From contig NC_042997.1 of the NCBI RefSeq assembly GCF_006345805.1, positions 95,294,001 to 95,358,000 on the forward strand: 64,000 nucleotides of DNA. The letters are read 5' to 3'. Within the stretch, counting starts at the first letter, position 1. Each line of letters begins with the position of its first letter. Positions 1 to 61,937 of this stretch are shown piece by piece. Below the pieces are notes generated by a model. The model was not told the origin of the DNA and ran no database searches. It saw only the letters and a program-made list of their open reading frames with translations. The DNA comes from Octopus sinensis. Taxonomy: Eukaryota. The position numbers and the translations under genes were made by a program.

Positions 1-618
1 ATAATGAAAAAATATATAATATAGTGATGATACAATAAGCAGTGACAAAGAAATATATAAATACTATATAAATATGTAAATACTATAGATAAAAGCGGAC
101 GTAAACAATTACGAATGAATGACAAAATAAAAAAAAGTATAAAAGGATATATAACGAAATCTACGGAGAAAAATTTTTAAATGATAAAATAAAATAATCT
201 TAATTTAAGAAGTAAATGTTAGAGCGTAATAATTACGAAAAAATATAACGTTAAAAAATAGCGTAAAACAAATGTAAAAATATATATGTTCAGTCTACCG
301 TTGTATAACATGGTCATAATTCGGACTAATTTCAAATTAACACCGCAAGGCTCAGCAAAAATATGTACTTTCCCACATACTTGAATGCTTCTTTTAAACT
401 ATGGCTTAATAAGTATATTATCTTAATAGTAACAATAGTGCAGGAAATAAATAAGTACATTGTGGGGGCTTTACTTTCTTTTATTACCACCCTTTGTTCA
501 CACTCACCACACTAATATAACTCCCCACATCGAATGGTAAATTAATGTAAACTAAAACGTTCATATTAAATAATACTAGTAGCAGCTTTACGTACGAATT
601 AAATTTATTTCTTTATTT

Positions 619-1308
619 TAGTGTTGGACGTTATTTATTAAACACTTCAGTTGATGTTTACATTATACTTTCATTTCCTCCTGAGCGTTAAGTAGTCCTG
701 TTTTCGCCCATAATATCTCCATGAATTTATGGGTACATAACAGACATAAACTATTCCCAATTCTATACGATTTAGTTTTACTTATTATATCCCACTATAA
801 TTCATATTTAACCTCCAAATGTATTTACTTAATCCTAACGATTTCATTAGTTTCTTATTTTTCAATGAATTCATATGCTGTGCTATTTGTTGTTTAATTT
901 CATTGGATGTGGACCTAATATACATTCTATCTGGATAACTTTCAGTATCCGTATTATTTATTTCGTTTTTGCATTTCCATATACATTTACTGAAACCACA
1001 TATTTATATACTACATCCATTACATCTACCGTGGTTTTTATCCCTACAATTGCAACGTTTAAGGTCTCCAGCCTTCCTATTAGGATGCTTATTTAATTTA
1101 TCGTAGTAATATTTATTCAACCAATGCTTATTTAATGATGAGATGATGTTCCCTACATTGAATAGGATTGGGAATAGGTTATGCCCATTATGTACCCATG
1201 AATTCATGGAGATATTATGGGCCAAACGGAACTACTTAACGCTCAGGAGGAAAGGAAAATAAAATGTAAGCATAAACTGAAGTCTTTAATTAATAATGGC
1301 CAACCCTA
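619..1308 (-). mobile_element. Penelope-like element fragment (GIY-YIG endonuclease C-terminus) with an inverted copy of its 3' end
   Basis: Minus-strand translation across frameshifts gives CNCRDKN...DVVYKYVV...MYIRSTSNEIKQQIAQH...LSKYIWRL...SYRIGNSLCLLCTHKF...LLNAQEE...CKH, typical of a PLE GIY-YIG region. Bases 619-770 and ~1160-1308 are inverted copies of each other. Confidence 0.8.
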
Positions 1309-8613: not shown

Positions 8614-8714
8614 CGTATACGTATATATGCAAATATATATATATATTATGTGTATACATATATATATGCACATGTATACATATTTATGCATATATAGATA
8701 TGATCATGTGTACG

Positions 8715-8761
<47 letters not shown>

Positions 8762-10947
8762 ATATATGGATATATTCAGAGATTCACGTACAAACACACT
8801 CACACACACGCACACATGTATGTTGCTCTCAAAAATTTTGACTCAATTAATTTTACATGTAGTTATGCAAGGATGATCTGATCGAGGACAACCTTTTGTG
8901 TATTACAATTTATTATTCTGGTGCTTCTTATGAGACTTTATGCTCCTCCATACTAATGTGTTTGAAAATATTCCTTGATTAGGTTATTTAAGTAATGACT
9001 GCTAAATTTCCCTTAGGACTTTCAGCATGTGGAACATATAATGTTGTGCAACTGAACATTCTTAATGAGATGAAACGAAATAAATGCTTAATCAATATAA
9101 ATTTTACCGTAATGAGAAGAATATTCATTAGCGGAAATGCAAATCGCGCTCAGATGGCGAGAGAGAAAAAAATTCTTGTTAACGCGAATATATTTTCATC
9201 TTACGGGTATGATTTTACTTGGTTAAATATTATCTCAGATCACCATATTAGATATGGTAGACTGTACGTAACTTAAAATGTTCCACTCATGGTTATACAA
9301 CAGTATCACGGGATTTGGCGGCGCTTTGTGTCCATATGCAAAGAATTTCATTTCTTGTTCTACTCTTTTCTGATGGAATTAGTATAATCCAGTTTATGGC
9401 GCAAATCTTCTTCAGTTAAGGTTAAAGCAAGTATATATTATTAACATATATAATGGTTGTACTGTCCAATATATTCAGGTTAAAATTATACCGAATAATT
9501 TGTTATTTGTTTTTAAAGACTCCACTTTCAAACTTGAAGTATGTTCGATAGCTAGCTTTAGTAGCAACACAAACTTAACACCAGCGCTAATAACACTAGC
9601 TCTAACATTTCTTAAATGTTCACATAACACACAATATACGTCGTTCAAGAAACAAAAATATAACACTCATCTCTAACAGAGTTAAATACTAAGAAAGTAC
9701 AAAGTTTCAACAAACTGAAAATATATACAGGCCTAGAAACACCTACACCCCCAATATGAATTCTGACTAATTTGCTAGTGTGCGTTCGTCACTATTTAGC
9801 ACGTTATAATAACAACAGCTTTCACTCGCTGATGGAATCCATTTTGTTACTCTCTTTTGTAGCAACGACTAAAATATATAGTCATACAGATAGGCTAGAG
9901 AGTGAAGAGACTATATACTTCAGTCCATGTAAATAGTTACCTCTTTTCAGAATTTAGTCATCTATGTGCAACCTCGGTGTATCTGGAAACAATATATCTA
10001 TGAGAACAGATATGTTACACTGAAATCTTCATGACATAGAATTCCTTCATCAAGACTACTCTTGTAAAATGAAGTACAATATTCAATTGAAAACAAATTG
10101 AAAATTAATTTTTAAAATCTTCGTCATATTTAATATAACGTTTAAAGTAAAATTTCGTAAGGTAGAATAACTAGTCCAGATTTGAACGAGCAAGCAACTT
10201 CATTTTAGTTTAGTGATTTTTTCCCATACTATTTTAGTATTTTCTCGTTTGCATTTTCAAGATGTGCATATATATATATATATATACAATATTCTTTCCT
10301 TTGCGTTTTTTTTCAGTTGATTTAACTTATAATGTTCGAGATAATTAAAAACATTGAACGAAACATATAAGATTTATTTTATTTCGTTTATTTTGAAGTG
10401 GTTTGCGCACCTGGCAATTCGTAGCTTTAATTAGATGTGTTTAATCGCTTAAAACTTATTTGGTTTACAATTCGATAAAAATAAGTTACGTGTGAGAATT
10501 AGAATTATGAGAGGTTAAACTATTGATTATTTTCATACCGAAAAAATCGCGTGGATATATCAACCTATTAGGTCGTCTTTTTCACACCGATTTTAACATG
10601 GAATACACATCCAAGGATAATGAGACATGAATGCAGTGACGTCAAAATTATTGACGTATAATTAATCAAAATGGTTTAATAGTGATAGGGTATTGAAGAC
10701 AGACATAAAATTTTGCAATAATAATTAGTAATATTAGTTATAGTGGAAGAAAGATTTGCACTTCTGTTCAAAGATATATAATTTTGACAGTGTACATACA
10801 CTTCAGTGTATTTCCTATTGGTCTTTTACACTTTGATCATTGACACGATGTCCCCGTGATACACTGGGTGATGGTGTGTATTGGTGTATGCAAGTGTACA
10901 TTCTATGTGTGTATGAACTCATATGGATATATATATATATATATATA

Positions 10948-11228: not shown

Positions 11229-11455
11229 CAATCGCATATTGTTGCATATTCATATGCAGTGATTCATGCATTATTGGTGCGATCTATTTAGGCCAAATAT
11301 ATTTGACATGGAGAAAAACATCTCATTGTGGAATGTTCCATGTTTACTACTGTTACCAAATCTAATTCAAATTTATTTCAAACGATGTCAAATTTATTTG
11401 CCTTGAGAGGTCGCACCAATAATGCATGAATCGCTGCACATGATTGGTGCGATTG
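11229..11455. mobile_element. MITE-like foldback element
   Basis: ~58-bp inverted arms at 11251-11309 and 11385-11442, plus an outer 8-bp inverted repeat caatcgca/tgcgattg. Confidence 0.7.
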
Positions 11456-11687
11456 AAACACATGACATACTTTTATGCTAACTGGAACCATTTTGATATT
11501 GCTCTTTACACTCTAAGTAGCCAAGAAATGAACTGCAACATCTGACGAGAGCTTAAGGTAGATTATCAAAAAAAAGAAAAAAAAGAAAAGGAATAAAAGA
11601 AAAAACGAACAAGCGGAAGGAACCAGAAAGTTAATATCTGCCTCTATATCATATCCCTCCTCATGCGATATACATGCATATATATAT

Positions 11688-11740
<53 letters not shown>

Positions 11741-11950
11741 TATATGTATGTGTGTGTGTGTGTGTATACATACATACATATATATATATACAGCAAGAAG
11801 ATGGAACATTAAAACTGAAACACTCTTTAATAACATAACAGATTATAATTTCTGTGTCTGTGCAGTGTTAACTGTTTTAAGTTGCTGAGTTTTAATTCTC
11901 GTTCATTACAAAATTTATTTCATAAATAATTACGTCAATAGGTATGATTC

Positions 11951-12038
11951 AGTAACAGTTTTGTGCCAGTACTTCGTCGCGCAGACTGCGCTATGAGGAG
12001 TATGTTGCCCGATGAAGTGCTGGCACAGAGCTTTTGCT
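11951..12038 (+). ncRNA. candidate pri/pre-miRNA hairpin
   Basis: Bulge-free 34-position stem (11951-11984 with 12005-12038): 32 paired, 6 of them G-U on the + strand, no A-C mismatches; ~20-nt apical region. Confidence 0.6.
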
Positions 12039-14819
12039 AGAACATGTATTTGTGTAATTATTTATGAAATAATTTTATGTAATGCCTGAAAATGAAAGCT
12101 CAGTATAGCTGATGCTCGTTGCACAGAAACAAATATGCTAATTTGTTATTAAACCCGTTATTTCCATCTTCGTGCATAAATTTTTCACATAAATCCCGTA
12201 TACTGATGTAGTGTGACATGTTTATCCAGCTCAGAAAATAAACTTGCTGTATGATGGCTTATGGTAGTCGATACCAATATAGGAGCTTTTAAATGCAGGT
12301 TGCTAGGTTATAAGTGAGATAATATTGAATGTATTTGAGCACGTTATTTTGAATTCTTTTCCTGCGTATATATAAACGTCTACTAGGTTTCATTAGCATG
12401 AACAATAGATGTATGAGAGTTGCGGTGTGGGTAACAGAAGAAAGAAATGAATTTTATATAGGAATCAACATTATTACAGTTGTAGCATTGTTAATTGAGA
12501 TGTCATTGTTCTTGCTTTAAAGACAAGAATGTAATACTTATGCGTGTCTCTTTACAATTCATACGAAATAAACATATTCCTATATATTTCCTGTTCGCTT
12601 CTACGCTTTTTCACTCCATTTATGTTCGTATATCTATTATTGAATAGTTTCAAATGTATTTTATATCATAATAATGATTTGATCTAAAATTAATGTAATG
12701 CATTTCCGAGAGGGTTCCAGGAGAGAAAACGTGGAAGTATTTATTTTTAAAATATATATTTAAAGAAACTGCATCTAAAAGGCATTGTGTATTGTATTAT
12801 TATTTATGAATCAATAACTAGTTTTGGTACTTTCATTTGTTAGACAAGCAACTCCATGTAAAAGAATTCGAAAATTCTGTTTATGGTATATTATCAATAC
12901 ATATATATCATATAAGTACTTCTAAAGAAAACCATTGAATAAATACTGATGAATAGTAATTACCAACATCCTGCTGACTTTCGAATTCGATATATATTTC
13001 ACTATTTCAACGCTCAAAATCTTTTCTTAAAAATAATGTTGTATATAGAATAACATTAGGTGAGGTACTTGCTAAAATTTTGTGATGTTTTGCATAACTC
13101 AATTTTCACTGCAAGCACTTTTTACAGTGGTGTGCATATTAACATATACTGCATCGAGGCTTTATTATTTTGTGATTTTATTCCTAACATCGAATTGGCA
13201 GCAAATATCTAGGAACGCTACTAGTGTACATTTAAGAAACAACAGTGATGTTGAAGATCAACATGTCCCGGAAATCATATTGGTGTAAAAAAAATACTAT
13301 TGGTGTAAAGAATCCTTCTTTAAATTATTAAATGTTCTATAATTGCCTTCAATTTCAGAGGCTTTTATATAAAAGAAGGCGTCATTGCCAGTTCAAATCT
13401 AACATATTCATACGTAAAAATGATACGGAATGAACATCACATGGGAATAAACCGCATTTAACAATTGGCTTTCCGGCTGGTGGGTTACTGTAAGATATCA
13501 CAGGAAAAATATAGTTTGACCCGCTAAATATATGACATCGATGCTAAAGTAAGGGAGTTAGCAGAATTGTATTTCAGGTAATCAGTATCGATTTAGAAGT
13601 GCTTGAACGCTTTTCTGATAACTTTTAAAATATTATTTTAGATGCCTATATTATCAGTTTTGTGAAGTATAAAGGGTTCGCAGTCTTAATTCCACATGGT
13701 TGTATGAACTCCATTCCATATTATATGTGACATATGGTAATGTGAGCAATAAAAGTTCTTTCGGAAACCTGAAAAATCGTATTTCGCTGCTCCCTGTAGC
13801 ACCTTGTACATGTATCTGTTATCAAACATACGGGTCAACGAAAGATACAGGAGTGGAATTTGGGAAAGATTTTCAGAGAGGAATTTTACTGTGGCAATTG
13901 TCCCACATCTTCAGGCCTATATATGCTTTTGTGAAAGCCCACTAGTTTGCAATTGCTCAGACTATATTCCAATCTAATAACTTCTCTTTCTGCGACTAGT
14001 TCGTAGATCCAAAATGTCATAGGTGAAAATCGACATCATAACGACCGACAGTCAAAAGAGATAGTCGATGAAATAATTTGATTCTTTCTTAAGAATCCTT
14101 TTTCCTCTCTTCGGGTTTAATGCTATAACCTGTCATCTCACAATTCCTAACGTTTGGAAATTGAATCTAAACATATTTGCAGAATAATTGCGACTCTGTT
14201 ACGATAATATAAACAAATATTTCCACAGTAATACTTTCCAATCAATTCATTTACAGCTAGATTTCATAAAATTTACCTCATTTTGCAAGTGTTAATTAAG
14301 AAAGATGTCTAGGTTTATAATCGAATAATATTCAATCACACCTTAACTCGAAGTTGTCATTACGATTAGCATAAAATATCGTAGATTTAAACAACTTCCC
14401 TTCAGTGTTGTATTCTAACTACAGGTATTGCAGGTTTACCTCTCAATTCATAAAATAGTATTTAAAGCATACGAATATCTGCAACAGCATATAATCTAGG
14501 TTCAATAATTTTTTGTCGAGAAAACTCTGCATTTTCTCTACTTTGCTGAACTGTATTCTGTACAAGAAGATGGCATTTTAAATAAATATAAACAACTTGC
14601 TCAAAGCGTTTTCTTTCTCTGACTACACCAAACTCCTTAGCATATAAGACATAAAGACAATACAGATTGATTTGTGATGGTAGGATTTAACACGGAGGAA
14701 ATACAGACATGTAAGAGCATTTCAATGGTCAGTATTAGAAGACCTCGACTGGATATTATTTAGAATAAAGGATTAGATGAAATATTGCGTAACGAAACCT
14801 ATTCACTTGAAACAGCCAT

Positions 14820-15013
14820 GTTCTATATTTTGGAGATGAAGAATTATGTACACTGTTTACGTTATTTATATGTGTCCTCATCTTTATTGTTACCACAACG
14901 CTTCGGCTGATTTACTCTCTCGCCTCCATCAAATGCCCTGGTAGAATTGTGAACCCAACCCTGGGTTCTCATTCGCAATGTCTATTTATTGCTGATATTA
15001 TTATTATTATTAC

Positions 15014-15107
<94 letters not shown>

Positions 15108-15215
15108 TATTATTATTATTATTATTATATTATTATTATTATTTATTCAAGGTTCTGCCTGGAATTGAGCTCGCAATCCTGCGGTTAGTAGACCGCACTC
15201 TTAACGACGGGCATA
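14820..15215 (-). mobile_element. tRNA-head/(AAT)n/hammerhead SINE-like element (family H2), copy 1
   Basis: Reverse complement shows a tRNA-like head (15148-15215), an (AAT)n tract, then aatgagaacccagg and a degenerate HHR (14893-14938). Confidence 0.75.
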
Positions 15216-15216
15216 C

Positions 15217-15455
15217 AGCGTACTGGATAATAGCGTGGGCTACTAACCCCAAGATTGTGAGTTCAATAATAATCATAATAATAATAATAATAATGATGAT
15301 GATAATAATAATAATATCAGTAAAAAAATAACTTAGCAATGAGAACCCAGGTATGGGTTCAAATGTCTACCAGGACACCTGATCAAACGTGGAGAGTAAA
15401 TCAGTCGAAACGTGATAAGAACAAACAAGATGAAGACACATATCCGTCCAATGTA
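15217..15455 (+). mobile_element. family H2 element, copy 2 (head-to-head with copy 1)
   Basis: ggataatagcgtgggctactaaccccaagattgtgagttc, then (AAT)n, then cttagcaatgagaacccagg...cacctgatca...cagtcgaaacg...caaacaagatgaagacacatatccg. Confidence 0.75.
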
Positions 15456-16580: not shown

Positions 16581-16729
16581 AACTGACTATATCAAGCCTA
16601 CAAGTTTTGTCGTTGTTTATTTAACACTTTTGATACGGAATGTATCCAGGACATCGAGGCAATGATGGTGTAACGAGAAAGGTGGCCGGCAGACTTTGCT
16701 GCTGCGGCGCAGGTTGGATCAAATTCTGA

Positions 16730-16830
16730 GATCAAATTCCACGGAGTTCAACTTTGCTCTTCATCATTCCTGGGTCGATAGAATAGGTACTAGCAGGGCT
16801 ATTGTGTCGATGTAATCGACTTACCTACTA
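16730..16830 (+). mobile_element. tRNA-derived SINE family B fragment; further copies at ~23450-23650(-), 29490-29690(-), 29716-29880, 30340-30520(-), 30550-30660, 56370-56530, 59160-59260
   Basis: Shared body ttctgag.tcaaattcc...gtcgactttgcctttcatcc...ggggtcgata...aagtaccag...gggtcgat.taatcgact matches the full copy at 52877-53101. Confidence 0.75.
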
Positions 16831-27775: not shown

Positions 27776-30700
27776 GGCTTTAATTTTCCTTTAGACCTTG
27801 AGAACGAAAGAATACCCGTATCCAAAAAGAACTTATCAGCCTATAGTCATCTATAATATATACTCGCAAAGTTAGTGAGTGTAACTGTGGATACACTAAC
27901 CTCGTGGATTTATTGATTGATTCATTCATTAATTATTACACTGCAGAGTTTAGATTAAAATTTCGTCAAGTGAATATTTAATGTATCTCGATAATAGACT
28001 CTATTAATCTATTTTTGTCAGTGCACAGAGTTCCGTGCAAGACAAACATGCGAGTTCAAACCCGAACGCATTTCTATACAAAGTAATTATCTGATAATCT
28101 CTTTAGAACAAGATTAGCAATAGGTCACTGACGAAAGTCCAAGAAACAAGTAGCTTTTCGGTTAATCTCTGCATTGATAAAACGTGGAGTGTATTTACTT
28201 TCTCTTCTAAAGTTTTACAAGGATGCCGACTGAAAGGTTTATTTGTAAAAACATGCATACGGCCTCGAAAACAAAACTGTCTATTGCACTATTAACTTAT
28301 CTGATAATTTACTTTGTTAACGCAGGCACTATCACAAGGAAGGAAGAGACTACTACAGCTCTTTCCGTGTATGGATATAAAATATATAGCTCAAACTACG
28401 TGAAGATTCTTTCCATTGTAAAGATCTAACAAGACTAAAATTAATTCACGTTATTTCTTTCAATCCTTAGACATCAAATTCTAGAAGTAGAAAATGGCCT
28501 TGAAACGCGATATATAATGTAGGAATTTTTCTTATTAAAGAAAAGATAAGATACAGTTCCCTCAAAGTTATAGACTTTCTTCCAGCATCACTTAACTAAT
28601 TTACCCGCGTGTATAAATATCTCTACACACCATTATTGCTATCAAATCCACCACGTAAGATAATCATATAGACGACATTATTTGTACTAAAAGTGTTGAA
28701 CAAATTTTCTTGAGATATGTGCTTCGAATAATAGTCAATTTCGGCTCTTAATTTTTTCATAGTATTTAGAGATGTATAGTACACTTTTAGTTGTTATTTC
28801 TACTATAGTTCACTTCGTATTTATAGTGCCAATAGATTAATTTTTATCATACTTTATTATCCAAAGATAATTAAATTGTAGTGAATTTTTAGATCATTAA
28901 TAGGAAACAGAATTGCTGAATATAAAGAATTATATATGATCAAATTATTTGCGTTTTCAATTTGCCTGTTGCTGACACAGTATAAACCCAATCATTTGAC
29001 AATTAACCTAAATTATGTGCTGAAATTATTTTATGACGTTAACTGTCATATATGGCCGGCTGGGAGAAATGAACATTAGATTTAATTAGTCCAGCCATCC
29101 TACATGCTTAATTCGGTAATAAGATGAAGGAACACTAGAAAATTCTACGTGTGCAATAAAAAACTACAAATCAGTTGATGTGACGAGACGAAAACGACGG
29201 ATCCTATTAGAACCCATGAATCATAATTTTACACTAAAAACCCTATTTCCGCCGATTAGATACACACGGTAGTTCATAATGATACTTCTCATTTTTTGTA
29301 ATAAGTGTAATTTATTTGTAATAAACACGCTTGTTCCAATCCAAGATACTTGTGTCTAAAAAGTGTTCCAATCCTAGTTACACTTGTCTAAAAGGAGTCC
29401 TAACTTTATGCTTTAATTTTTCATCAATAATAATGTCTTTGTCAGTATATAACATTATTAATTTAAGATAGATATTTATTTCAAATATTGGCACAAAGTC
29501 AGCAATTTCGTGTGAGGGGCTCAGTCGGTTACAATGGCCTCAAAGTTCTACTGGTACTTATTCTATCGACGCCGAAGGGATGAAAGGCAAAGTTGACCTC
29601 GGGAGATTTTAAACTCAGAACGTAAAGACGGACGAAATGATGCTATGCGTTTTTGATATGGTGCTAACGATTCTGCTAGTTCCCCGTCTATTTTAAGTTT
29701 AATATTAACAGATAGTAAGACGGCGAGCTGGCAGAATCGTTACCGCACCGGACAAAATGCTTCGCATCATTTCTTCCGACTTTACAAATGCGACCGGTGC
29801 ATGTAATATACTATCGGGTCCTATAATATACGTACCGTATGTGCACTGGGGTCGATGTAGTTGACTTACACTCTCCATTGAAATTGCAAGACTTATTTCA
29901 AAATTTGGAATCAATATTAACTTATGTTATCGTAAGTAAATATCATATGCAAATACAAGCTTAAATAATTAATTGTTGTCGGCGAACCATGCAGCATTAT
30001 TTAACCATAATACACTACCAAATATGTTAAAGCCTGATAAGTCGATAGCGTATCCTACATGTGTTAGCAGTGCAATTTAATCACTTTTAAATATCTTCTC
30101 TACAAATTTTCGTAGCTTTTAGTGCTGACTAATTTATATCGAAAATCTGTAGCGATAACTTTAAAAAGTGATTAAATCGCACCATTATCAGCCATTATCA
30201 CTGGTAGTATATAATATCCACTTATCAGCCTTGAACATATTTGGCTGAATATTAAGGTTGCATAATGAAGTACAGTTCCCCGACCAGCAATAAGTTACTT
30301 AAGTTAGTATTTACTTATGATAAAGTATGTTAATATTCGTTTAAAATTTTGACACAAGTCCTGTAATTTCGGGGAAAGGTGTAAGTCGATTACTTTGACC
30401 CGAGTGCAAAACTGGTTCTTATTTTATGGGACCTAAAAGGATGAAACGCAAAGTCGACCCCGGCCACTAGGTATTTTGTCTGACCCGGTAACGATAATGC
30501 CAGCTTGCCGCCTTAATCGCTGTTGATATCAAGGCAAAAAATAAAAAAAAGTAAGAAATTCCACAGAGGTTGACTTTGTCTTTCATCCCTCAGGCTAGAC
30601 CAAGTAAGTACCAGTTAGCATTGGAGTCGATATAATCGACTTCTCCTTACTGCAAAGTTTGAAAACAATAATCACTATTTATCTTACATTATCGAGTGGA

Positions 30701-35585: not shown

Positions 35586-36798
35586 TCAGGTCATCCCATA
35601 AGTTCTGTCCGATTTTACCTTTTTAAAAATTGAATGACTTTTAATAGTATTTTAGAATGTCTAATGTAATTAAAACTTATTTTCATGCATTTGTGTACAT
35701 TTAAACTAATTAGATATTATTTTACAGAATAATAGAATTAAAATTTCTTTGATTAAATCCCTTTCTAAAATGGAAGTATCCAAAGAGCATTTGAGGCACA
35801 TAATGCTTTATGAGTACGAAAAAGTAAACTCTGCAGCCGAAGCGACTCGAAACGTACACTCAGTTTATGGAAAAGGATACATGAATGAAATAACTTGCAG
35901 AAGATGGTTTGCAAAATTCAGGAGTGGAGATTTCAGCCTTGAAGATGAAGATCGAACAGGACGTCCAGTTGAGTTTGATGATAAGCTCCTTGAGGCATTA
36001 CTTGAAGAAAATTCTGCATTATCAGTTGAAGAATTAGCAATAAAGCTTAGTTCAAACCATACAACTGTTTATCGTCATCTTCAACAACATGGAAAGTTTC
36101 CTAAACTTGAAAATAGGTGAATTGTCCGAAAGCAACTGCAAATGCCGAGTTGCATCTGCTCTTCTCTCCATTCTCGCGAACGCAGTTCACCATTTTTGGA
36201 TAGACTTGTGACTGCTGACGAAAAATGGATCTTCTATCGAAATGTTAAACGTCGTAAGCAGTGGCTTGGTAAAAGGAAAAAAGCTCAACCACAACCGTGA
36301 AGGGAACTTCATGGAAAAAAAGGTTCTTCTCCCTATCTGGTGGGATTGCAAAGGAGTAATTTATTATGAATTTTTACCACGTAATACAACAATCAAAGCT
36401 CAAGTCTACAGTCAGCAATTCGAGCATTTGAACCAAACCTTGAAGAAAAAATATTCGCTTTAGTGAATCGAAAAGGAGTGATGTTTCATCAGGACAATGA
36501 GCGACCCCACACTGCACAGATCATCCAGCTTATTCTCCCGACCTTGACCCTTCAGACTACCGTTTGTTTCGTAGTTTACATTTGTGGCACATAACTTTCG
36601 CAAGCCAGAAGGAAGTCGAAACTAACATTTCAGAGTTCTTCGCTTTGAAACCAAAAGAGTTTTACATTGTAAATAGATTGAAGGAAGTAATAGATAATCA
36701 GGGATAGTACGTTGATGATTAATTTTCTATTAAATATAAGATTTGACCACTTGTTTTTCTTTATTCAAAATTCGGACAGAACTAATGGGATGAATTGT
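35586..36798 (+). mobile_element. mariner element with TIRs; transposase pseudogene at ~35770-36722
   Basis: TIRs tcaggtcatcccataagttctgtccg and cggacagaactaatgggatgaattg, TA on the left flank. Translation: MEVSKEHLRHIMLYE...RRWFAKFRSGDFSLEDEDRTGRP, LVTADEKWIFYRN, VLLPIWWDCKG, HQDNERPH, YSPDLDPSDY. Deletion in the WVPHEL linker plus other frameshifts. Confidence 0.95.
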
Positions 36799-45300: not shown

Positions 45301-46975
<1,675 letters not shown>

Positions 46976-46989
46976 GTTTTTTGTTATTC

Positions 46990-49900
46990 TTCTTGAAACG
47001 GATACGCCCTAATGAAATCTCTAGTTGGTACTTTCAATGGTTTTTTTCACTGTTGTTGGGACCAATTTGGTTCTAGATATCGTTAACGATAACTTTAAGA
47101 ACCAGGTTGTGTCGCCATGTATAGCTGTTCAATGCTAAGGAAGAGTTAGAAAGAATATATTTCAGTATTCCAACCTTTCCACATTTTCATATATCATTCC
47201 CTGAGACTTTCCATCTTACTAGCTTCTTAGCTGATGGCAAAACATCATAGGATGAACGAATCGGAAATCTTAGCCGAGGTGTGGACCACCTCCATATCTC
47301 ATTCCAACTTATTTTCCACTCAACAACATGTTCTTCCCATCTCGTCATCTGTCCTTGTTGAATGCATCGGATCAAGTGACATTCTCTTCTCTCTGTTTCC
47401 CTAGTTTTGATGCTTTTGCTAACAGATCTGCGTTCGCTCCGCATCATACTTGCAAACTGTCTGAACTGATCTGCGCCAAAACAATCTCCCTTCAGATGAG
47501 TTTTGCATTGCACCTACCATATCACGGTGTGTAAGAGTAGACAAGATATCATCAGCCACCGCTTCTGTTTTCCACTTCCTTGCTGTTTTCGCCACTGGTG
47601 GATTACACTTGAGTTCTATGTCTTTCGATTCTCTCAGGATCATCACTGTTCGTACCTTCCCAAGTTCAGATATTTCGACTATTGACGCCTGTTGTAACTG
47701 CAACGAGCCTCTTTTACGATAAAGAGCTGAACTGTTCAACATCCGAGGTCGGCCTAGCCACTTTCTAATGAACACATTACATTTTTGTTCAATGATCTGA
47801 ACTCGTGACAATGCTACCTCGTATATTAAATGTGACAACGAAAGTTGCGGATACAAGCCGAACTGCAAGCACTAAATTTGATATTTACCTGGTAACTTTG
47901 ATATATCAACGGCTGATAATCCAACATCAGCTTGTTTCATAATTTCCATTTCGTGACTCCTTTCTGACAATGTTCCAGCATATACTCGCCCAGAGCTTTT
48001 GACGGGTTCTTCTTTGACTCTTGGAATGCTTTCTTCAGCTATTGAAACTTAAATTATTTCTGCACTCACTTAACAATTATCAGACAACGCGACTTTTTTG
48101 CCCTAAACCGCATCCTTGGCCACCAAACAAGCTCGTCTAATCTCAAGAGGGCACTCTGCATGCTTTGTTTATCTGTAGATACATGTGACATATCATCCAT
48201 GGAGACTTTCTTAGGCGATTGTATATTTGTTCGAAAAATGCATGGCTTTCAAAATCATCTCCATGACTAAGATAAACTATGTGACAGATATTGTACAGCC
48301 AGCAGCAATGCCAATTTTCAATCGGTACCATCCTGTTGTAAAATCTCCAGCTGTAAACCTCATCTTGAAGCTGTCATAACATATTCTCATTATTTTCGTT
48401 ACTTTGGAATGTAGAAGTGGTCCATGGCTCTCACCAGTAATTCGTGTGGCACTCAGCCATATGCATTAGCGACGTGAAGCTATACTACGTTCAGACTTCT
48501 CTTGTTCGGTTTGACATCCTAGATCGCTTTATAGATCAGAAAAAAGTGTTGAACGCATCCAGGGATCCCAGTGATTCCGGCCTTTTGAACAGATTCGTCA
48601 ACATATCCATTACTCTGTAAATATCTCACTGCTTTCCTTGAAAGAATTCTCATAAAGATCTTGACTTCCACATTCAATAAGGATATCAGCCTAAACTGTT
48701 TTATAGTCTCTGCATTGGCCTCCTGTGGCAGGTATATGCCTTTGCCTTACACCAATACTTTGCTACAATCTCTTCGCGCCACAGCTGTTGGAGTAGAACA
48801 AAGAGCTTTTGCAGACGATTGCAGTATGAGTAAACTTTATACGAGACACCATCACCTCCTGGGGCATTCTTTGCTCTAGTGTTTCATTCACCTCTGTCTT
48901 CCTGATGTTCCGTATTTGAAATTTGATATCAGGTTCTAAGAGATGATTTAGCTCCTGTAGAGGAGGCAGTGGATGGTTATGGTACGGATCTTTGTAGGTT
49001 TCTTTGATATGAGCGTCCAATTCTTCTTTTGTGCACGATAAAGTACCACACGTCGGTTCAGTGACCAGCTTCAGAGTAAACCCGTGCGGGTCTTTCAGAA
49101 ACTGCCTCCGAGTCAATTTACTCTCCTTTCGTTGCTCTTATTGGCGGATATATCGTTGCACATGACGGCATTCGTGTTCAAATCGTCGTACAACAGCGCG
49201 AGGCCAGATTCTTCATCTTCGGTAGCATATTTCCATCGATTTCTTAGGCTGGTCTTTTCCTTCCTCAACTGTTTTATTTTCCTGATTCTCCTGCTTGGTC
49301 CACACTTTCCTTTCGCTAATCGGATACTATCTTTCACTCCAAATAAGTCCTTTCCTGTATCGTAAATTGAACTTGTTAACTTTCCCGGTCTCTCCATTGT
49401 AGAGCCTGTAATTTTATAAAGAGCTCAATATACCTTGTTTTGAAACACTTTATATTTTCCTTTCTCATTATCAGCAGGCCCAAAAATCCTCGGTTTCTTC
49501 CGAGTACTATCTGATGCACCAGTTTCATAACCTGCAGTTTCCTGTCAGGTAGAGGTCTTTGCTGTAGCATTTATCGATTTGCTATGTTTTGAGTCCGGGG
49601 ATGATTTGCCACGTGCTTTACGATCAGCTGATCTATACTACTCTGTCCTCTTCTTACAAGTCTTTCCCTGTTGTATCTTCAAGCCTCTCTCGGTTGCAAA
49701 GATCCTACAGCACAGCTTGCATCCAAAGTTGCTGGTACTCGTTCGCTGTTCGAATGAATAGCCGTACTCGTGTACATGTTTCTTTCCGTGTTAACTGGGT
49801 TTGATTGATTCTCGACTCCCCACTCTCGGTCAATCGTGGGATTGTCATTCTCATTGGTATCTGTTACAACATATTACAAAGGCGAGGATCGTACGTCTGC

Positions 49901-49990: not shown

Positions 49991-50799
49991 TTTTTTTTTC
50001 CTACCTGAACATGGCAGGTGCAAACTTTATTCATATACTTAGAGTAAAGTTTTCTGTTAATTAATGTTTTTTTTTTTAAATTCCAAGATCAAATATCTTT
50101 CGATATTTGCTAATCATTATTGAATCAGAATAATCAAAACAGATTTGAATCTTCGAAATACGATGTAAAGTAGCAAATCAAATTTTAGTGTCTCCAAAAT
50201 ATCCTTAGATAAACGTTTTTGAATAAAATATAATTCTCTATAATTTAATTTTCCTGATCTGTTTCATCAAAATTACACGGTAAAGTATTCATTCATAAAA
50301 TATTTATAAGTGAAATCTTAAATATTATTGATTTCTGTTATTTACTTTCTATTAGAGTTTCTAAGTTTCTTATAATTATTATTTGCTTCCAGAGCAAAAT
50401 ATCGTGCAGATTTATGTGCTTTTTTTACCTGAAAGAATTTTCAGTATTCTTATATTATATTGAAATAAATAATATTTTAATTGCGATTTAAAGTTAAAAC
50501 TACTATATTCGTTGTCTACAAATATTCAAGCGATTTGATAACATAATTCTCAGAAATAATTTGGAACATTCTCAAGGCACTTGCTATGTGGATTTATTCA
50601 GTTTTCAGTTTTATTCGTTTTGTTTTTTATGAACTTTTCTTATATTTCAATATTTTATATTTGCACAGTTTGCAAATAATGTTTAGGAACAGATTACTAT
50701 ATGTTGCAACGTATACTTTTACAATAGGCGGTGAAGGGAATATATGTCTAAAACTTGGATATTGTAGCCTTTAGACATAATTAAACCATAAGAGAAATA

Positions 50800-51320
50800 T
50801 TAAACATTACTTCTAACCTCAAGAAAATTATTATTGGTGTTTCTGAACTTTGTACCTTGAAAAACAGCCGCAAGAGTGTTAAGTCCTGTTCGTTGCGCAG
50901 CGACATGTGTCAAGTCAATTACATCTTGAATCATATGAGGAATGTTATGATTTATTCGGAAGATGGAACATGTAAAGCTACCCATTTGGTGTACGCCGCA
51001 GAATGCACCATACACAACTTGATTTATATTTGTTGTACAGCAGAACAATTAAACAAAATTTTCAATGGGTATCGGTATGATATTAGGCACAATAGCAGTA
51101 GTTCGACAGCACTTGCCAAATATTTTACATCAAATGGCTGCAATTTTGAGGAACATGTGAAAGCGCACATTCTCAGAAAATATTCAGAATCTACTACCCA
51201 TTCAGTCCTCAAAATGCATGACGACCGATATATTTGCGAATTACTAAAATCACCTCCTAGAGAATGAATAAAATGAAAGGTGAATTTCATCACATATACA
51301 CAAAACTGTTGGATTAAATA
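50800..51320 (+). mobile_element. Penelope-like GIY-YIG endonuclease fragment
   Basis: ORF 50857-51267: TCKATHLVYAAECTIHNLIYICCTAEQLNKIFNGYRYDI...ALAKYF...YICEL, a GIY-YIG pattern (VY...YI...R..H-like). Confidence 0.8.
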
Positions 51321-52876: not shown

Positions 52877-53101
52877 AGGCGAGCTGGCAGAATCGTTAGC
52901 ACGCCGGGCGAAATGCGTAGCCGTATTTCGTATGTCGTTACGTTCTGAGTTCAAATTCCGCCGACGTCGACTTTGCCTTTCATCCTCTCGGGGTCGATAA
53001 ATAAAGTACCAGTTTCGCACTGGGTCGATGTAATCGACTTAATCCCATTTCTGTCCTTGTTTGTCCCCTCTATGTTTAGCCCCTTGTGGGTAGTACAGAA
53101 A
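52877..53101 (+). mobile_element. tRNA-derived SINE family B, near full length
   Basis: ggcgagctggcagaatcgttagcacgccgggcgaaatg...gttctgagttcaaattccgcc (A and B boxes) plus the shared body. Confidence 0.85.
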
Positions 53102-53196: not shown

Positions 53197-53306
<110 letters not shown>

Positions 53307-53477
53307 GTGGTGTGTGAAAGTACGTGGTCGGATATATAGAAAATTGAAAAGAGTGAAAAAAATACAGAAGGCTTGTTTTATAAGGTTAAAGAATATATTT
53401 AAGTCGTTATGATAGAAGAATGTTATAAAAGTTTTCATATAGTAACATAGTTTTTGAATTCGTATTCCTATGTGAAA

Positions 53478-56086: not shown

Positions 56087-56956
56087 CATTTTAGTGCTTC
56101 AGAGATTCTTAATTTCAGTGTATTACGAATTATATATTCAGCTTTTACTGAAGCCTGAGCAGCTGTGTTCTTTATGCATTGTTGCTTCACTTATGTATTT
56201 ATTTGCTTTTATCAATTTATTCCAACCTCTATATTTTTTGCTTTGTTTTACAATAAATCCTCATATATGGTAATATAATCTTTTTTTACTAGCTTAACCC
56301 GTGAAAATTTCACGGAAAATGTAAAAAAATTAAGCATCTATAAACAGTGTATTGGCGCCAAACGCATGTTCGCATATTGTGACCGTCTGCCTTTATGTTC
56401 TGAGTTCAAATTCTGCCGAGGTCGACTTTAGCTTTCGTTCCTTCGGGGTCGATAAATTTAGTACTTGTTGTATACTGGGGTAGATCTAATCAACTCTCCT
56501 CCCGACAAAAGTTCCAGGCCTAGAAAAGTATATTGTGACAGTTACAAATATAGAAAGTAATGTAACACCAATGACTATATATAATCCAACCAAAATATAT
56601 CAGTTACACAAACGTAAACATAATTACTATTTAACCTTAAAATAGATCGTACATATCCAAAGAACCTTCTTTGGATATGGAACATTCTTCTGGTATTCTT
56701 TTATTCTTTTACTTGTTTCAGTTATTTGACAGTGGCCATGCTGGAGCACCACCCTTTAGTCGAAGAAAATTTTCCCTGGACTTATTCCCTGTAAGCCTAG
56801 TACTCATTCTATCAGTGTATTCTGCTGAACAGCTAAATTGCGGGGACGCAAACGTACCATCATCAGTTGTCAAGTAATGGTGGTGGTGGTGGTGGGACAA
56901 ACCCAGACACACAGGCACAGACAGACAGACTCACACACACACAAACACACACACAC

Positions 56957-57700: not shown

Positions 57701-59031
57701 AACATTTTCATTTATTGCAAGACAGTCAGAATTTCTAGGAGATAAAATTACTCGCGTTTCCATTTTTTCTGGCATGCACTCGTTGAAAAGTTCTGGGTAC
57801 AAATGTACAAATAGAAATGCAAAAGAACGAAATAATAAATGAATTTATGAATGAAAGTTTGGTAACTGAGCATACAAATAAATACATACAAACACACACC
57901 CACACAAACAGGCACATACACACATATACATATATATGTCTCGAGTTGTAGCTGTAATTCAAATGGGCCAGCCTTCTCATATTCTGTGTGAGGCTGAATC
58001 TCCGTGAGAACTATGATAGTGTTATGCATGTCTGTGGAGTACTCAGCCTCTTGCGAGTTAAGTTTATCCTCGTGTGATAATGAAAAGTGAAATTGATAGC
58101 AAATATTTGCTATGATTAGCTACAAATCTTCTTTGCCTATGATTAACTTCTGGTTTTATTTTAAGAGATTTCTTTCATATGGGATATATTGCTGATTATC
58201 TGAAAAGAACTTTTAATAACAAAGCTATAAACGACGGTTTGAAATACCTATATTATTGCAATAGTTTAATGAAGCTTGCCGGGGAAGGGATTATACCTGA
58301 CACTGTGCGTTGAAACGAAAACAATTGTAATGTGAATGACACATTAGACACCCAGAAACATATTAGCAATTTAGAAACGCAGACGCTGTTAATTTTAATT
58401 AAACAATTATTATTTGGTGTCAAGATTTTAGACGCCAATATAATACCTTCAGTGACATCTTGTAAGGAACTAGGTTGTAGATGGTGTGGCAAGTATTTTG
58501 GCAACAAATGATGTTATGTTTACACGAAGCCCTGCTGTGATTTTCTGAGTGTCTTCCACGTCGTAATCGTCGAATGAAATTGTTTTTAGAAAAAGCAGCA
58601 ATGTAAACTTTTAAAACTGAAATTTCATTTTTCACTATGACTATAAATTCAGCTAAAAATCTTGCCTGATTCGAAGAACTAGCTGCTGTAAAATTTAGTT
58701 CGTTCGTCTTTAGTTTTACTTGTACCCACTCAAATATATTTGACTTCATTAAAATTTATTCCTTGGGCATGTGTTTTCTAATATAGCCCCAAGTCGACTA
58801 AAGCCCTGTGAGTGGATTTAGTAAATGGAAACAAAAAAGCACCCCACTATCGCTTGACAGCCGATGTTGGTGTATTGACGTTCCCGTAACTTAACGGATT
58901 GACAAAATAGATCGATAGAATAAGTTACTAGGCTTACAAAGAATAAATCCTGGGGTCAATTTGCTCGACTAAAGGCGGTGCTCCAACATGACCGCAGTTA
59001 AATGACTGAAACAAGTAAAAAGAAATAAATA

Positions 59032-59127: not shown

Positions 59128-61937
59128 ACCTATATATATATACATATTGATTACGTACATGGTATTTTACATCCGTCGAGATCGATGTTTCTTTATTCTT
59201 TTCAAGGTTGAAAAATAAGTACCAGTTGTGTATAATGAACGACGTGGTCGACTAGCCCGTTCCTCTAGTATTTATATGACACCAAGCAATATGATTTTGC
59301 CAACATTATTACTTCGTGCCGTATGTATTTATCTGAAATCTAGCAATATGATTTTGCCATCATATTGCTTGGTTTAACATTTTATTGTGTGGATTTGATA
59401 CTGTACATAAGTAGTCGTTTTATACCGCCAAACGGTAGTTGAAATTATTGATCGATTAATGGTAATGTCATGGAGACAAATTTGGATTACCATTTTGGAT
59501 GTTATTTGCAATGCCAATCTACATGCAATTAATTTCATTATAACACCTCATATAACGCCTCAGAGAAATTTTCCATTTGAATATAGAAAATTATTGCCGT
59601 AAGATTACACAGAGAAAGTAAGTTATCCGCTTAACAATTCCAATAATACAATAAATTATACTTTACCAGAATAGTGCTGTAACTACTGAGGTAATTTGTT
59701 GTGAATCTTCATCCAATTAAATGCACTGTTGTTTGACGCAATACACAGCATTATTTAAATCAGGATGATTATTTACATTGGTGAGATTTTATAAATCTAG
59801 AATAAAAACGTTACACACGTCTAAGATTTCCTGAAAATATTTTATAATAATTATTTGATAGAAAAAATGGAAATAAATGTTCATCTGAAGTTTTCCATTA
59901 TACTTTAATGACAGAACTCTGTATGTATAATTGCATGAATCTTTTTAGAGTTTAGAAGCATTTCAAATGCACACAGACTTATTGCAACCTCATTCTAAAA
60001 AGTGCAACACAAATTTCAGGAGTTAATAACTTGAAATACGCACTACCACAAGATTTCTCAAATCTATGAGTAAATTATAACCACATAATCGTCCGCCATA
60101 TGTTAAGACAATAGCTAAATTAACTTTTTAATTGATACAAACCTTTAGTTTTTTCATATCATCTTTCATATAGGAGTTTTCTTTATAAATATATATACTC
60201 TTACTCTCTCTTTTACTCTTTTACTTGTTTCAGTTTCCGTCCACCAAATCCACTCACAAGGCTTTAGTCGGCCCGAGGCTATAGTAGAAGACACTTGCCC
60301 GAGTTGCCAGGCAGTAGGACTGAACCCGTAACCATGTGGTTCGTAAGCAAGCTTCTTACCACACAGCCGCTCCTGCGCCTATTTCATAATTTTTATGAGA
60401 AAATTGCCATTAGTTAAATATGCACTTTTCTAAGATATTTATACACTTAAAGCAAGTTGCCTATGACCTCTAAATGCTACCTAACCGCTTTTAAAGTGTT
60501 AGTTCAGTAATTTAAATAAAAAGGAAAATGCATTTATTTACTATTAGCTTACATCTACATGAAACCTTTCTTCTCAAATTCTTACATATTTCGGTTAAGT
60601 ATCTTATGTAGTCACTACAAATGCATTTATCAACTGCATAAATTCTATCAACTATTTTTAAAAGTATGCTTTTTTATTTCGTGCCAGTAGGTGTGTGCTT
60701 CACTTTTTCTAGCCCCCCCCCCCAATCCCCCCCTATCAGTCAGTTTCTTACTACACGTCTGTGTATTTGATCATAAAGATCCAAGTGCAATGTTGTATTT
60801 CACTTTGGTTTATATGAATGTGCAACACACAGTTTAGAGCAATTATCAACCGCAGTTTACAAGGGACTTTTAAAAAATGGCCTTAAACCATCGAACTCCA
60901 TTATGAAAATAAATGTTCTTTAATTAATTTCGATAGTCTTCTTATAGTAAATCATATAGGTATTTTGACACAACTCTTTATCTGAATCACCCACATAGTA
61001 AAACACAAACTCACATTTTGAATTATTTTACATAATGCTTTCATTTAAAAAGATGGTTCCGAAATCGATAGCGATTTTCCCATCCTACGTTACTTAACAT
61101 AACTGGCATTTTGAGAGCATGTTTTGCTCATTAGATATACAGTAATTGTTAAGTTCGTACTCCTGAAAAATATGCCGCTTAACCTTTCTCAAAGAAATGT
61201 ATGAAATGGTCATTAATTGACGATCAGCATATTCATTAGATGACATGACACTCGAAGAACAAAACGTCACTATATAGTTCTGGCTTAAATGATTGTCTCT
61301 TGCTGGCAACAAATTGATTTCTGTTGACAAAATTGGATATAAATGCATTCAGCTCAACATCATCTTTCATAAATCAATATATCGATTTCATTTTAAATTA
61401 GGATGGACTTGATGGATGAATCATTATTTGTGGGACTTAACTGATGTTCAAATATAATTAGCTACGAAAGCTTGTACGTTCTTCATCCAAATGTAACCAA
61501 CAGCATATGTAAACCGATTGATGCAAGAGTAATTAATACAGTTCACTCTAGCTCGTTTTCAGTAGATACAAGATTCGAATTGCTTATATATAATGCTTGA
61601 ATAAAATTCAGAATGACAGACAGAATAATGCCCACATTATTTTAACACGGTAAAGAACGATTTTGTGAGGTAACATATTTCTTGCCAGACTAAATGCAAA
61701 AAAACGCACCTGCAGATGAAAATGAGGATATTATACAACCGAAGACTTTAATAAAAAATATTTTGGCATAAGACAGTCATTTGTGTAACAAACAAAATTA
61801 TCCATAGATATCACAACTAGCCGGACAAAATTATTTAACAGCAAGGAATTGCAACAAGCAAAAGTGCTAGTTGTAAAATGTACTTCAGAGATCAACGCAG
61901 CAGTTGTACTGACAAGTAATATTAGTAGCCACGTTAA

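What the first reader, a model, noticed from the sequence alone, without database searches (positions are those of the whole stretch)
11951..12038. Candidate microRNA gene with canonical Microprocessor geometry
Seen: a 34-position stem with no bulges, only two mismatches (C-U, C-C) and six G-U wobbles. All wobbles favour the + strand and there are no A-C mismatches; decay of a DNA inverted repeat should give both types. Arms of ~22 nt (5p ~11964-11986 UGCCAGUACUUCGUCGCGCAGAC; 3p ~12006-12027 UGCCCGAUGAAGUGCUGGCACA) leave a ~11-13-bp basal stem and a ~60-nt pre-miRNA. Known: coleoids have a large expansion of novel miRNA families. From memory only, the 3p arm resembles MIR-22/miR-745 (GCUGCCUGAUGAAGAGCUG) with a changed seed; this needs checking. 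I found no CNNC or basal UG motif.
Basis: partly seen in the sequence, partly recalled or inferred. Interest (0 to 1): 0.8.

Follow-up and report, generated by a model that had tools for sequence, protein, structure and literature searches.

The report
Hairpin at tip of decayed foldback
The microRNA-like hairpin is real and favours one strand, but it is only the best-kept tip of a much longer, older inverted repeat, so it is at most a young, unconfirmed microRNA candidate and not a member of the MIR-22 family.

Summary
There is a 34-position stem (11951-11984 / 12005-12038) with C-U and C-C mismatches, six G-U wobbles and no A-C. The + strand folds at -50.6 kcal/mol against -30.2 for the - strand. 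There is no CNNC, basal UG or apical UGU.

The helix continues below 11951/12038, so there is no single-stranded basal junction where Drosha would need one.

The arms are equally diverged at the DNA level in tip and outer parts (79% vs 80% Watson-Crick). Given the foldback-wide decay rate, a clean 34-column run occurs somewhere in 57% of simulations, and at the apex in 5.6%.

The best evidence for function is the wobble bias: 15 G-U to 2 A-C across the foldback, against 47:47 in the window's other inverted repeats (p = 0.003). The tip is also GC-rich (51% vs 28-30%).

The MIR-22/miR-745 resemblance fails both the Rfam models and the seed comparison.

I could obtain no small-RNA reads, no orthologues and no genome-wide copy number, and I could not identify the organism.

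Verdict: a plausible young, foldback-derived miRNA-like locus (about 0.4), nearly tied with inert foldback DNA.

The parts
11793..12176 (+). Whole foldback: a ~190-nt left arm, a ~20-nt centre and a ~190-nt right arm
   Evidence: RNA fold of 11780-12190: MFE -145.2 kcal/mol, z = -11.5; - strand -116.1. Inverted self-match 11885-12103 at 72%. Arm alignment: 141 Watson-Crick, 15 G-U, 2 A-C, 19 other mismatches, about 12 indel events.
11793..11950 (+). Outer left arm, AT-rich (28% GC), decayed by indels
11915..11934 (+). 5' strand of a 20-bp perfect A/U-rich helix (partner 12053-12072) lying below the putative pri-miRNA
   Evidence: Pair probabilities 0.85-1.0
11939..11942 (+). 5' side of a 4x3 internal loop (3' side 12047-12049). 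This is the first real interruption below the stem, about 21 positions below the proposed Drosha cut
11951..11984 (+).
11964..11986 (+). Putative 5p product UGCCAGUACUUCGUCGCGCAGAC (prediction only)
   Evidence: Sequence confirmed. The register is inferred from the distance to the loop; no reads are available.
11985..12004 (+). Apical loop of ~20 nt, with only weak internal pairs (P about 0.23)
12005..12038 (+). 3' strand of the 34-position stem
12006..12027 (+). Putative 3p product UGCCCGAUGAAGUGCUGGCACA. It is the predicted guide because its 5' end is U and sits at the weaker duplex end, next to the C-C mismatch (inference)
12039..12176 (+). Outer right arm, AT-rich (30% GC)
11660..11792 (.). 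(TA)n(TG)n(TACA)n microsatellite abutting the left end of the foldback. It is context, not part of the hairpin, and it obscures any target-site duplication

Best explanation
An old inverted duplication of about 190 bp produced a ~380-bp foldback at 11793-12176. This much is shown. The origin is either a local duplication or template-switch event, or a palindromic insertion. The outer, AT-rich arms have since decayed through indels and non-pairing substitutions. The GC-rich apex has accumulated the same number of substitutions, but almost only ones that keep RNA pairing on the + strand. I infer that the locus is transcribed on the + strand, probably inside a longer intronic or non-coding transcript, and folds into a long hairpin. 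Its apical 34-41 bp plus ~20-nt loop can be measured by Microprocessor from the loop side and then diced, giving a ~22-nt duplex (5p from about 11964, 3p from about 12006, with 3p the likelier guide). On this reading it is a young, lineage-restricted, foldback-derived miRNA-like locus (a proto-miRNA). It is not a canonical conserved miRNA and not a MIR-22 member. The extended basal helix and the absence of UG/UGU/CNNC motifs predict inefficient or imprecise Drosha cleavage.
For: The hairpin is real and is the most stable fold in the window. There is a strong strand difference: -50.6 vs -30.2 for the tip and -145.2 vs -116.1 for the foldback. G-U:A-C is 15:2 over the foldback and 6:0 in the tip, against 47:47 for all other non-repetitive inverted repeats in the window. 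That gives binomial p = 0.0023 and Fisher p = 0.0033. The arms are equally diverged at the DNA level in tip and outer parts (79% vs 80% Watson-Crick), but G-U makes up 6 of 8 substitutions in the tip against 9 of 28 outside (p = 0.046), and the tip has no indels. The tip is 51% GC, in the top 1.9% of 88-nt windows, against 28-30% in the outer arms. The loop is ~20 nt, and the stem of 34 positions fits the ~35-bp, >=10-nt-loop preference quoted in PMC10710096. No second copy is found in the window, although a genuine dispersed repeat is easily detected there. Inverted-repeat and template-switch origins of new miRNAs are documented (PMC10710096). The published octopus miRNA count is stated to be an underestimate that omits lineage-specific genes (PMC9699675).
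Against: There is no expression, processing or conservation evidence of any kind. There is no single-stranded basal junction, because the helix continues. None of the three Microprocessor sequence motifs is present at any register. A 34-column run with <=2 disruptions is expected somewhere in 57% of permutations at the foldback's own decay rate, and at the apex in 5.6%. The wobble bias extends into the outer arms (9:2), which a 35-bp miRNA alone would not explain. After allowing for about 10 inverted repeats examined, its significance is only about 0.02-0.03. The window holds at least four long foldbacks in 64 kb, so the prior that any one of them is a gene is low. No seed match was found to any O. 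vulgaris miRNA in the held target table, though that table is truncated and the species is unknown.
Confidence: 0.4

Rival explanations
1. Inert foldback DNA. This would be a neutral inverted duplication or a decayed palindromic transposon that makes no processed RNA. The clean apex would be the luckiest stretch of a decaying palindrome, and the wobble bias would be chance or a local strand-biased mutation process.
For: The hairpin is the tip of a 380-nt inverted repeat. A clean 34-column run somewhere is expected 57% of the time. Foldbacks are common here: H2 at 29622-29785, H3 at 15120-15310, H4 at 11250-11443 and a 640-nt one at 29817-30433. H2 is demonstrably built from two inverted copies of a dispersed repeat. 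The transition-to-transversion mismatch ratio in the foldback (17:19) matches the background (94:109). That is what a strand-biased mutation process would leave, rather than general purging of disruptive changes. There are no Microprocessor motifs and no basal junction.
Against: The 15:2 wobble bias against a 47:47 background has p = 0.003. The neighbourhood shows no consistent G+T excess on the + strand that would indicate transcription-coupled mutation bias. The clean run sits exactly at the apex (5.6%), where the GC-rich island also lies.
Confidence: 0.35
2. A long double-stranded RNA element within a + strand transcript that acts as, or is tolerated as, a structured region. One example would be an ADAR hyper-editing substrate of the kind abundant in coleoid transcripts, without discrete miRNA output.
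For: The wobble bias is not confined to the tip (9:2 in the outer arms). About 125 bp of each arm stays well paired, including a 20-bp perfect A/U helix. Coleoids have elevated A-to-I editing in nervous tissue (PMC9699675 abstract).
Against: The outer arms carry 19 non-pairing mismatches and about 12 indels, so constraint there is weak at best. No coding exon or editing target was identified nearby. The organism is unverified.
Confidence: 0.12
3. One copy of a palindromic MITE or foldback transposon family. This concerns origin and is compatible with either function above, as with human mir-548 from MADE1 elements (from my own knowledge).
For: It has a full-length palindromic architecture with ~14-nt matching termini (GCAAGAAGATGGAA / TTCCATCTTCGTGC). 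The genome is TE-rich.
Against: There is no second copy in 64 kb at blastn word 7, E <= 10, while a real dispersed repeat shows at least 6 copies in the same window. No target-site duplication is recognisable, though the left flank is a microsatellite. Genome-wide copy number could not be measured.
Confidence: 0.25
4. An already catalogued, conserved cephalopod miRNA (a MirGeneDB 'Novel' family), or a diverged MIR-22/miR-745 paralogue.
For: Octopus has Mir-22-P1 and Mir-22-P2.
Against: Rfam mir-745 scores 13.3 bits against a gathering score of 62, on the - strand only, and there is no mir-22 hit. The seeds differ at 2 of 7 positions. None of ten seed-site 8-mers (five registers per arm) occurs in the O. 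vulgaris conserved-target table, whereas let-7 and miR-124 controls occur 12 and 8 times. Nothing in the window reaches a gathering score.
Confidence: 0.06
5. A hairpin-RNA (hpRNA) locus that yields endogenous siRNAs along the whole stem, as in Drosophila.
For: It is a long inverted repeat with a strand-specific pairing bias.
Against: If the animal is a mollusc, DICER2 and siAGO are absent and no endo-siRNA signature was found (PMC11114477; PMC12479628, which covers 32 molluscs including O. bimaculoides). At ~190 bp with many interruptions, the stem is short and imperfect for an hpRNA.
Confidence: 0.03

Closest known systems
Canonical animal miRNA genes (MirGeneDB criteria; Microprocessor model)
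   Same: It is a single hairpin with a 34-position stem and a ~20-nt loop. Both arms are ~22 nt and start with U. The geometry allows 2-nt overhangs, and the hairpin is GC-richer than its surroundings.
   Different: The stem does not end in single-stranded flanks but continues for about 150 more nucleotides on each side. There are no UG, UGU or CNNC motifs. No reads and no second-species evidence are available.
New miRNAs born from inverted repeats, by template-switch mutation (PMC10710096) or from palindromic MITEs (human mir-548/MADE1, from my own knowledge)
   Same: The hairpin was created in one step by an inverted copy, and later substitutions are tolerated if they preserve pairing.
   Different: Template-switch events described in primates make short hairpins. 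Here the inverted repeat is ~380 nt and old (arms about 20% diverged). No evidence of multiple copies was found for a MITE.
MIR-22 / miR-745 family
   Different: The seed differs. The Rfam covariance models do not recognise it. The 5p similarity is not independent evidence, because it follows from complementarity to the 3p arm.
Giant miRNA hairpins of invertebrates (PMC12553114)
   Same: The precursor helix is far longer than 35 bp.
   Different: In those cases the extra length lies between miRNA and star, on the Dicer side, and the ~10-bp basal stem is kept. Here the extension is basal. That paper notes that molluscs appear to lack highly extended hairpins.
Drosophila hpRNA / endo-siRNA loci
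   Same: It is a long inverted repeat transcribed from one strand.
   Different: It is much shorter and less perfect. No similarity to a parental gene was found. The pathway is reported absent in molluscs.

Membership tests
Animal miRNA gene (MirGeneDB criteria) | Hairpin with at least 16 complementary positions between two ~22-nt arms | tested here: met
   32 of 34 positions are paired
Animal miRNA gene (MirGeneDB criteria) | Reads of 20-26 nt from both arms with 2-nt 3' offsets and homogeneous 5' ends | not testable with these tools
   No small-RNA data are accessible
Animal miRNA gene (MirGeneDB criteria) | About 35-bp stem bounded by a single-stranded basal junction, with an ~10-13-bp basal stem | tested here: not met
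   The predicted helix continues below 11951/12038 with P = 0.8-1.0. The first internal loop lies about 21 positions below the proposed cut
Animal miRNA gene (MirGeneDB criteria) | Unstructured apical loop of at least ~10 nt | tested here: met
   11985-12004 is ~20 nt with only weak internal pairs
Animal miRNA gene (MirGeneDB criteria) | Helper motifs: basal UG, apical UGU/GUG, downstream CNNC (not obligatory) | tested here: not met
   None is present at eight registers, and there is no CNNC within 38 nt
Animal miRNA gene (MirGeneDB criteria) | Presence and arm conservation in a second species (the rule used for octopus in PMC9699675) | not testable with these tools
   Two metagenome scans were empty. 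ORF look-ups were not on record. HMMER hits were spurious
MIR-22 / miR-745 | Seed identity with family members | tested here: not met
   Ovu-Mir-22-P1 GCUGCCU and P2 AGCUGCC, deduced from the site 8-mers, against GUUGCCC at the aligned position
MIR-22 / miR-745 | Covariance-model score at or above the Rfam gathering threshold | tested here: not met
   RF03471 mir-745 scores 13.3 bits against 62, on the - strand. mir-22 is not reported at E <= 10
MITE / foldback transposon | Many dispersed copies | tested here: inconclusive
   No second copy in 64 kb, while a true repeat shows at least 6 copies. The whole genome is not available
MITE / foldback transposon | Terminal inverted repeats flanked by a target-site duplication | tested here: inconclusive
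   The termini match at 13 of 14 positions, but no duplication is recognisable and the left flank is a microsatellite
hpRNA / endo-siRNA locus | Phased ~21-nt siRNA duplexes along a long near-perfect stem; Dicer-2/AGO2 dependence | not testable with these tools
   The literature reports the pathway absent in Mollusca. The organism is unverified

The most novel reading that the evidence does not exclude
The whole ~250-380-nt hairpin, not just its tip, is kept paired by selection on the + strand RNA. It would then be a long-stem small-RNA gene in an animal thought to lack a dedicated siRNA pathway. One possibility is a miRNA whose precursor is extended on the basal side, processed with an internal loop serving as the junction, somewhat as in plants. 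The other is a mollusc analogue of hpRNAs handled by the miRNA Dicer.
Probability: 0.08. Interest if true: 0.6.

Novelty: new member of a known kind. Interest (0 to 1): 0.28.

Why it matters
If small-RNA reads confirm it, this would be a snapshot of miRNA birth. It would show an old inverted duplication whose outer arms are rotting while the apex is held as an RNA helix, with substitutions filtered to G-U wobbles on the transcribed strand. That bears on how lineages with large miRNA expansions acquire new families. If reads are absent, it becomes a caution. A hairpin that looks textbook in isolation can be the luckiest stretch of a decaying palindrome, and hairpin candidates should always be folded together with several hundred nucleotides of context.

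Tried and rejected
1. Rfam. Nothing in the window reaches a gathering score. Permissive scans give only generic-hairpin or microsatellite matches.

2. Literature full-text search for both arms returned only a chance hit in a Salmonella paper.

3. Supplements of PMC9699675. Neither arm sequence was found, but let-7, miR-71 and miR-1 are also absent. That negative is therefore worthless. Only the seed-site table is usable.

4. The MirGeneDB 3.0 and MirMachine supplements are not held.

5. Exact-protein look-ups of three window ORFs were not on record.

6. Two metagenome scans, one for the exact 3p arm and one for a gapped two-arm pattern, were both empty.

7. X-joined composite pseudo-proteins in the search for homologous proteins returned nothing. 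The second composite contained a mariner HTH that scores 5e-21 against Pfam. The method evidently fails on such composites, so I draw no conclusion from either search.

The permitted single frame gave only spurious tandem-repeat ORFs.

9. Organism identification failed. The best TE relatives are anonymous ENA contigs at 84-88% identity, and named hits reach only about 60-69% (cnidarian, shrimp, brachiopod).

10. My first small control suggested a regional + strand G-U bias (16:6). The full control (47:47) overturned it.

11. I rejected CpG decay as the source of the wobbles: from the sequence, only one of the six (U12013 in AUG) sits in a CpG-to-TpG context.

Full report
THE OBSERVATION

The hairpin is exactly as described. 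The + strand RNA of 11951-12038 folds into one stem-loop with MFE -50.6 kcal/mol. That is z = -7.55 against 200 dinucleotide-preserving shuffles, none of which fold as well. The reverse complement reaches only -30.2, z = -3.7.

The pair map shows the following:
- 34 stacked positions, 11951-11984 against 12005-12038, with no bulges.
- Two mismatches: C11956-U12033 and C11980-C12009.
- Six G-U pairs, and no A-C opposition.
- An apical loop of ~20 nt.

They imply 2-nt 3' overhangs, a 13-position lower stem and a 64-nt precursor. There is no basal UG, apical UGU/GUG or CNNC at any of eight cleavage registers.

In a sliding 90-nt fold of both strands of the window (25,566 folds, mean -13.1, sd 6.3), this is the single most stable one. 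All but two of the other top 25 are (TA)n or (CA)n microsatellites.

The stem is only the apex of a much longer inverted repeat.
- Folding 11780-12190 gives one long hairpin from about 11793 to 12176: MFE -145.2, z = -11.5. The - strand gives -116.1.
- blastn finds the inverted self-match.
- Below 11951/12038 the helix goes on with pair probabilities of 0.8-1.0. In order, there is a 1-nt bulge (A12039), 3 bp, a 1-nt bulge (A11947), 4 bp, and a 4x3 internal loop (11939-11942 / 12047-12049). These are followed by 3 bp, a bulge, a 20-bp perfect A/U helix (11915-11934 / 12053-12072), and further helices out to the ends.

Drosha recognises the junction between a ~10-bp basal stem and single-stranded flanks (as stated in PMC12553114). 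That junction is not predicted here. The geometry fits the ruler measured from the loop, but not the ruler measured from the base. 'Canonical' is therefore too strong.

IS THE TIP SPECIAL WITHIN THE FOLDBACK?

I aligned the left arm to the reverse complement of the right arm with a scoring scheme that rewards only Watson-Crick matches. G-U and A-C are therefore treated alike.

| Region | Watson-Crick | G-U | A-C | Other mismatch | Gap columns |
|---|---|---|---|---|---|
| Tip | 30 | 6 | 0 | 2 | 3 (all in the loop) |
| Outer arms | 111 | 9 | 2 | 17 | 30 (about 12 events) |

At the DNA level the arms are equally diverged in both regions, at 79% and 80% Watson-Crick. So the tip is not a younger patch. 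What differs is the kind of change:
- G-U accounts for 6 of 8 substitutions in the tip, against 9 of 28 outside (Fisher p = 0.046).
- The tip has no indels.

However, the tip's boundaries were chosen by RNA pairing, which biases such tests. A permutation at the foldback-wide disruption rate (33 in 189 columns) gives a 34-column run with at most two disruptions somewhere in 57% of trials, and abutting the apex in 5.6%. The clean stem alone is therefore weak evidence.

The tip is compositionally distinct. It is 51% GC, in the top 1.9% of 88-nt windows, against 28-30% for the outer arms and 34% for the window.

THE WOBBLE ARGUMENT

- A first look at three other foldbacks suggested a shared + strand bias (16:6).
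- A full census of non-repetitive inverted repeats in the window gives 47 G-U to 47 A-C. There is no background bias.
- The candidate's 15:2 differs from 1:1 (binomial p = 0.0023) and from the background (Fisher p = 0.0033).
- Allowing for about ten repeats examined, this is roughly p = 0.02-0.03. That is suggestive rather than conclusive.

Three cautions apply:
- The bias extends into the outer arms (9:2), which a 35-bp miRNA would not require.
- The ratio of transition-type to transversion-type mismatches in the foldback (17:19) equals the background (94:109). That is what a strand-biased mutation process would also produce.
- Against that second point, the neighbourhood shows no consistent G+T excess on the + strand.

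Either reading implies that the + strand is the sense strand of a transcript. That is an inference, not an observation.

KNOWN FAMILIES

- Nothing in the window reaches an Rfam gathering score.
- On the hairpin alone, the best matches are 27-29 bits to unrelated families with gathering scores of 90. These are generic-hairpin similarity.
- The mir-745 model scores 13.3 bits against 62, and only on the - strand. Its consensus 3p arm does not align to the candidate's 3p arm. mir-22 is not reported at E <= 10 in a 111-nt search.
- The target table of PMC9699675 gives the O. vulgaris seeds: Mir-22-P1 GCUGCCU and Mir-22-P2 AGCUGCC. The candidate has GUUGCCC at the aligned place.
- I therefore do not file it under MIR-22.
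- None of ten seed-site 8-mers (five registers for each arm) occurs in that table, whereas let-7 and miR-124 sites occur 12 and 8 times. If the animal is an octopus, the hairpin is probably not one of the catalogued miRNAs with conserved targets. The table is truncated and lists only dominant arms, so this is moderate evidence.

COPY NUMBER AND ORIGIN

- The foldback has no second copy in the window at blastn word size 7, E <= 10.
- That test is meaningful for high-copy repeats. An ENA contig that shares a LINE with this window also carries a ~200-bp repeat with at least six copies in the window. Two inverted copies of it form the window's second-best hairpin, at 29622-29785.
- The candidate's termini match at 13 of 14 positions, but no target-site duplication is recognisable, and the left flank is a microsatellite.
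- The origin therefore remains open between a local inverted duplication, a template-switch event and a low- or moderate-copy palindromic element.

WHAT COULD NOT BE DONE

- No small-RNA data are accessible.
- No orthologous DNA was obtained. Both metagenome scans were empty, three exact-ORF look-ups were not on record, and the exhaustive HMMER search of the hairpin-spanning frame returned only spurious tandem-repeat ORFs.
- Two composite-query protein searches returned nothing. The second should have found mariner relatives, so the method evidently failed and I draw nothing from them.
- The organism was not identified. The TE content (mariner HTH_48 and zf-RVT by Pfam; other TE-like ORFs unmatched) and the microsatellite load say metazoan. 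The closest TE copies are on anonymous ENA contigs.

MECHANISM AND VERDICT

Shown: the locus is a decayed ~380-bp foldback with a GC-rich, strand-asymmetric apex.

Inferred: + strand transcription, folding into a long hairpin, and possible Drosha/Dicer release of a ~22-nt duplex from the apex. The 3p arm would be the likelier guide.

The extended basal helix and the missing motifs predict poor or imprecise cropping. If the animal is a mollusc, an siRNA-type reading is disfavoured, because DICER2 and siAGO are absent and no endo-siRNA signature is seen (PMC11114477; PMC12479628).

My estimates are below. The first four concern function and are alternatives to each other. The MITE origin is a separate question and is compatible with any of them.

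| Explanation | Probability |
|---|---|
| Young, foldback-derived miRNA-like locus | about 0.4 |
| Inert foldback | about 0.35 |
| Structured dsRNA or ADAR substrate without discrete products | about 0.12 |
| Catalogued conserved miRNA, or MIR-22 paralogue | about 0.06 |
| MITE origin (separate question) | about 0.25 |

This is an ordinary kind of candidate with one good hint of function. Read mapping and a genome BLAST would settle it quickly.

Noticed in passing
window 29622-29785 (+): The second-best non-repetitive hairpin (90-nt MFE -44.1; 164-nt foldback -87.7 on the + strand vs -78.7 on the - strand; G-U:A-C 5:0). It is built from two inverted copies of a dispersed ~200-bp repeat, so it is a TE-derived foldback.
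   Followed up: partly
window 16724-16821, 29479-29686, 29713-29785, 30332-30464, 52878-53039, 56384-56521; L001:97-304: A dispersed ~200-bp repeat family (SINE- or MITE-like) at 74-90% identity to an anonymous ENA metagenome contig that also carries the 3' end of the window's LINE. That sample therefore contains DNA of the same or a closely related animal.
   Followed up: partly
window 29817-30433: A large self-complementary region (~640 nt, 69% identity, G-U:A-C 19:14) immediately next to the 29.6-kb hairpin. Together they form a complex nest of inverted repeats.
   Followed up: no
window 11250-11443: Another foldback 500 bp upstream of the candidate, with 47-nt arms at 85% complementarity and a 100-nt spacer. 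It folds at -88.8 on the + strand and -84.1 on the - strand. It has a weak sub-threshold Rfam match to plant MIR2606. It is unrelated in sequence to the candidate.
   Followed up: partly
window 15120-15310 and 14868-15047 / 15265-15443: A hairpin flanked by (TAA)n runs and nested in a 180-nt inverted repeat (79% identity, G-U:A-C 6:12). It is possibly a foldback element with microsatellite tails.
   Followed up: no
window 614-775 / 1153-1313 and 58762-58832 / 60233-60303: Two further inverted-repeat pairs (162-nt arms at 85%; 71-nt arms at 82%, 1.4 kb apart) that could be terminal inverted repeats of DNA transposons.
   Followed up: no
window 35710-36704 (+): A mariner/Mos1-type transposase pseudogene. 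The HTH_48 domain scores E = 5e-21. The DDE region, recognised by eye only, is split over three frames.
   Followed up: partly
window 45340-46650 (+), 47190-49424 (-), 50785-51264 (+): A pile of retrotransposon-like fragments. The first has a zf-RVT domain (Pfam) and a C-terminal ORF with 700 homologues at E <= 1e-10, spread across cnidarians, crustaceans and brachiopods. The ORFs tested from the other two have no Pfam match and are called TE-like by eye only.
   Followed up: partly
window-wide, e.g. 11734-11792, 8701-8767, 53243-53327: (TA)n/(TG)n microsatellites give dozens of sub-threshold Rfam matches to mir-297, mir-3149, mir-1277 and mir-466 (up to 53 bits, against gathering scores of 81-100). 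These are low-complexity artefacts, not miRNA genes.
   Followed up: yes
tool behaviour: X-joined composite protein queries return no hits in the search for homologous proteins, even when they contain a domain with abundant homologues. Negatives from such queries are not evidence.
   Followed up: yes
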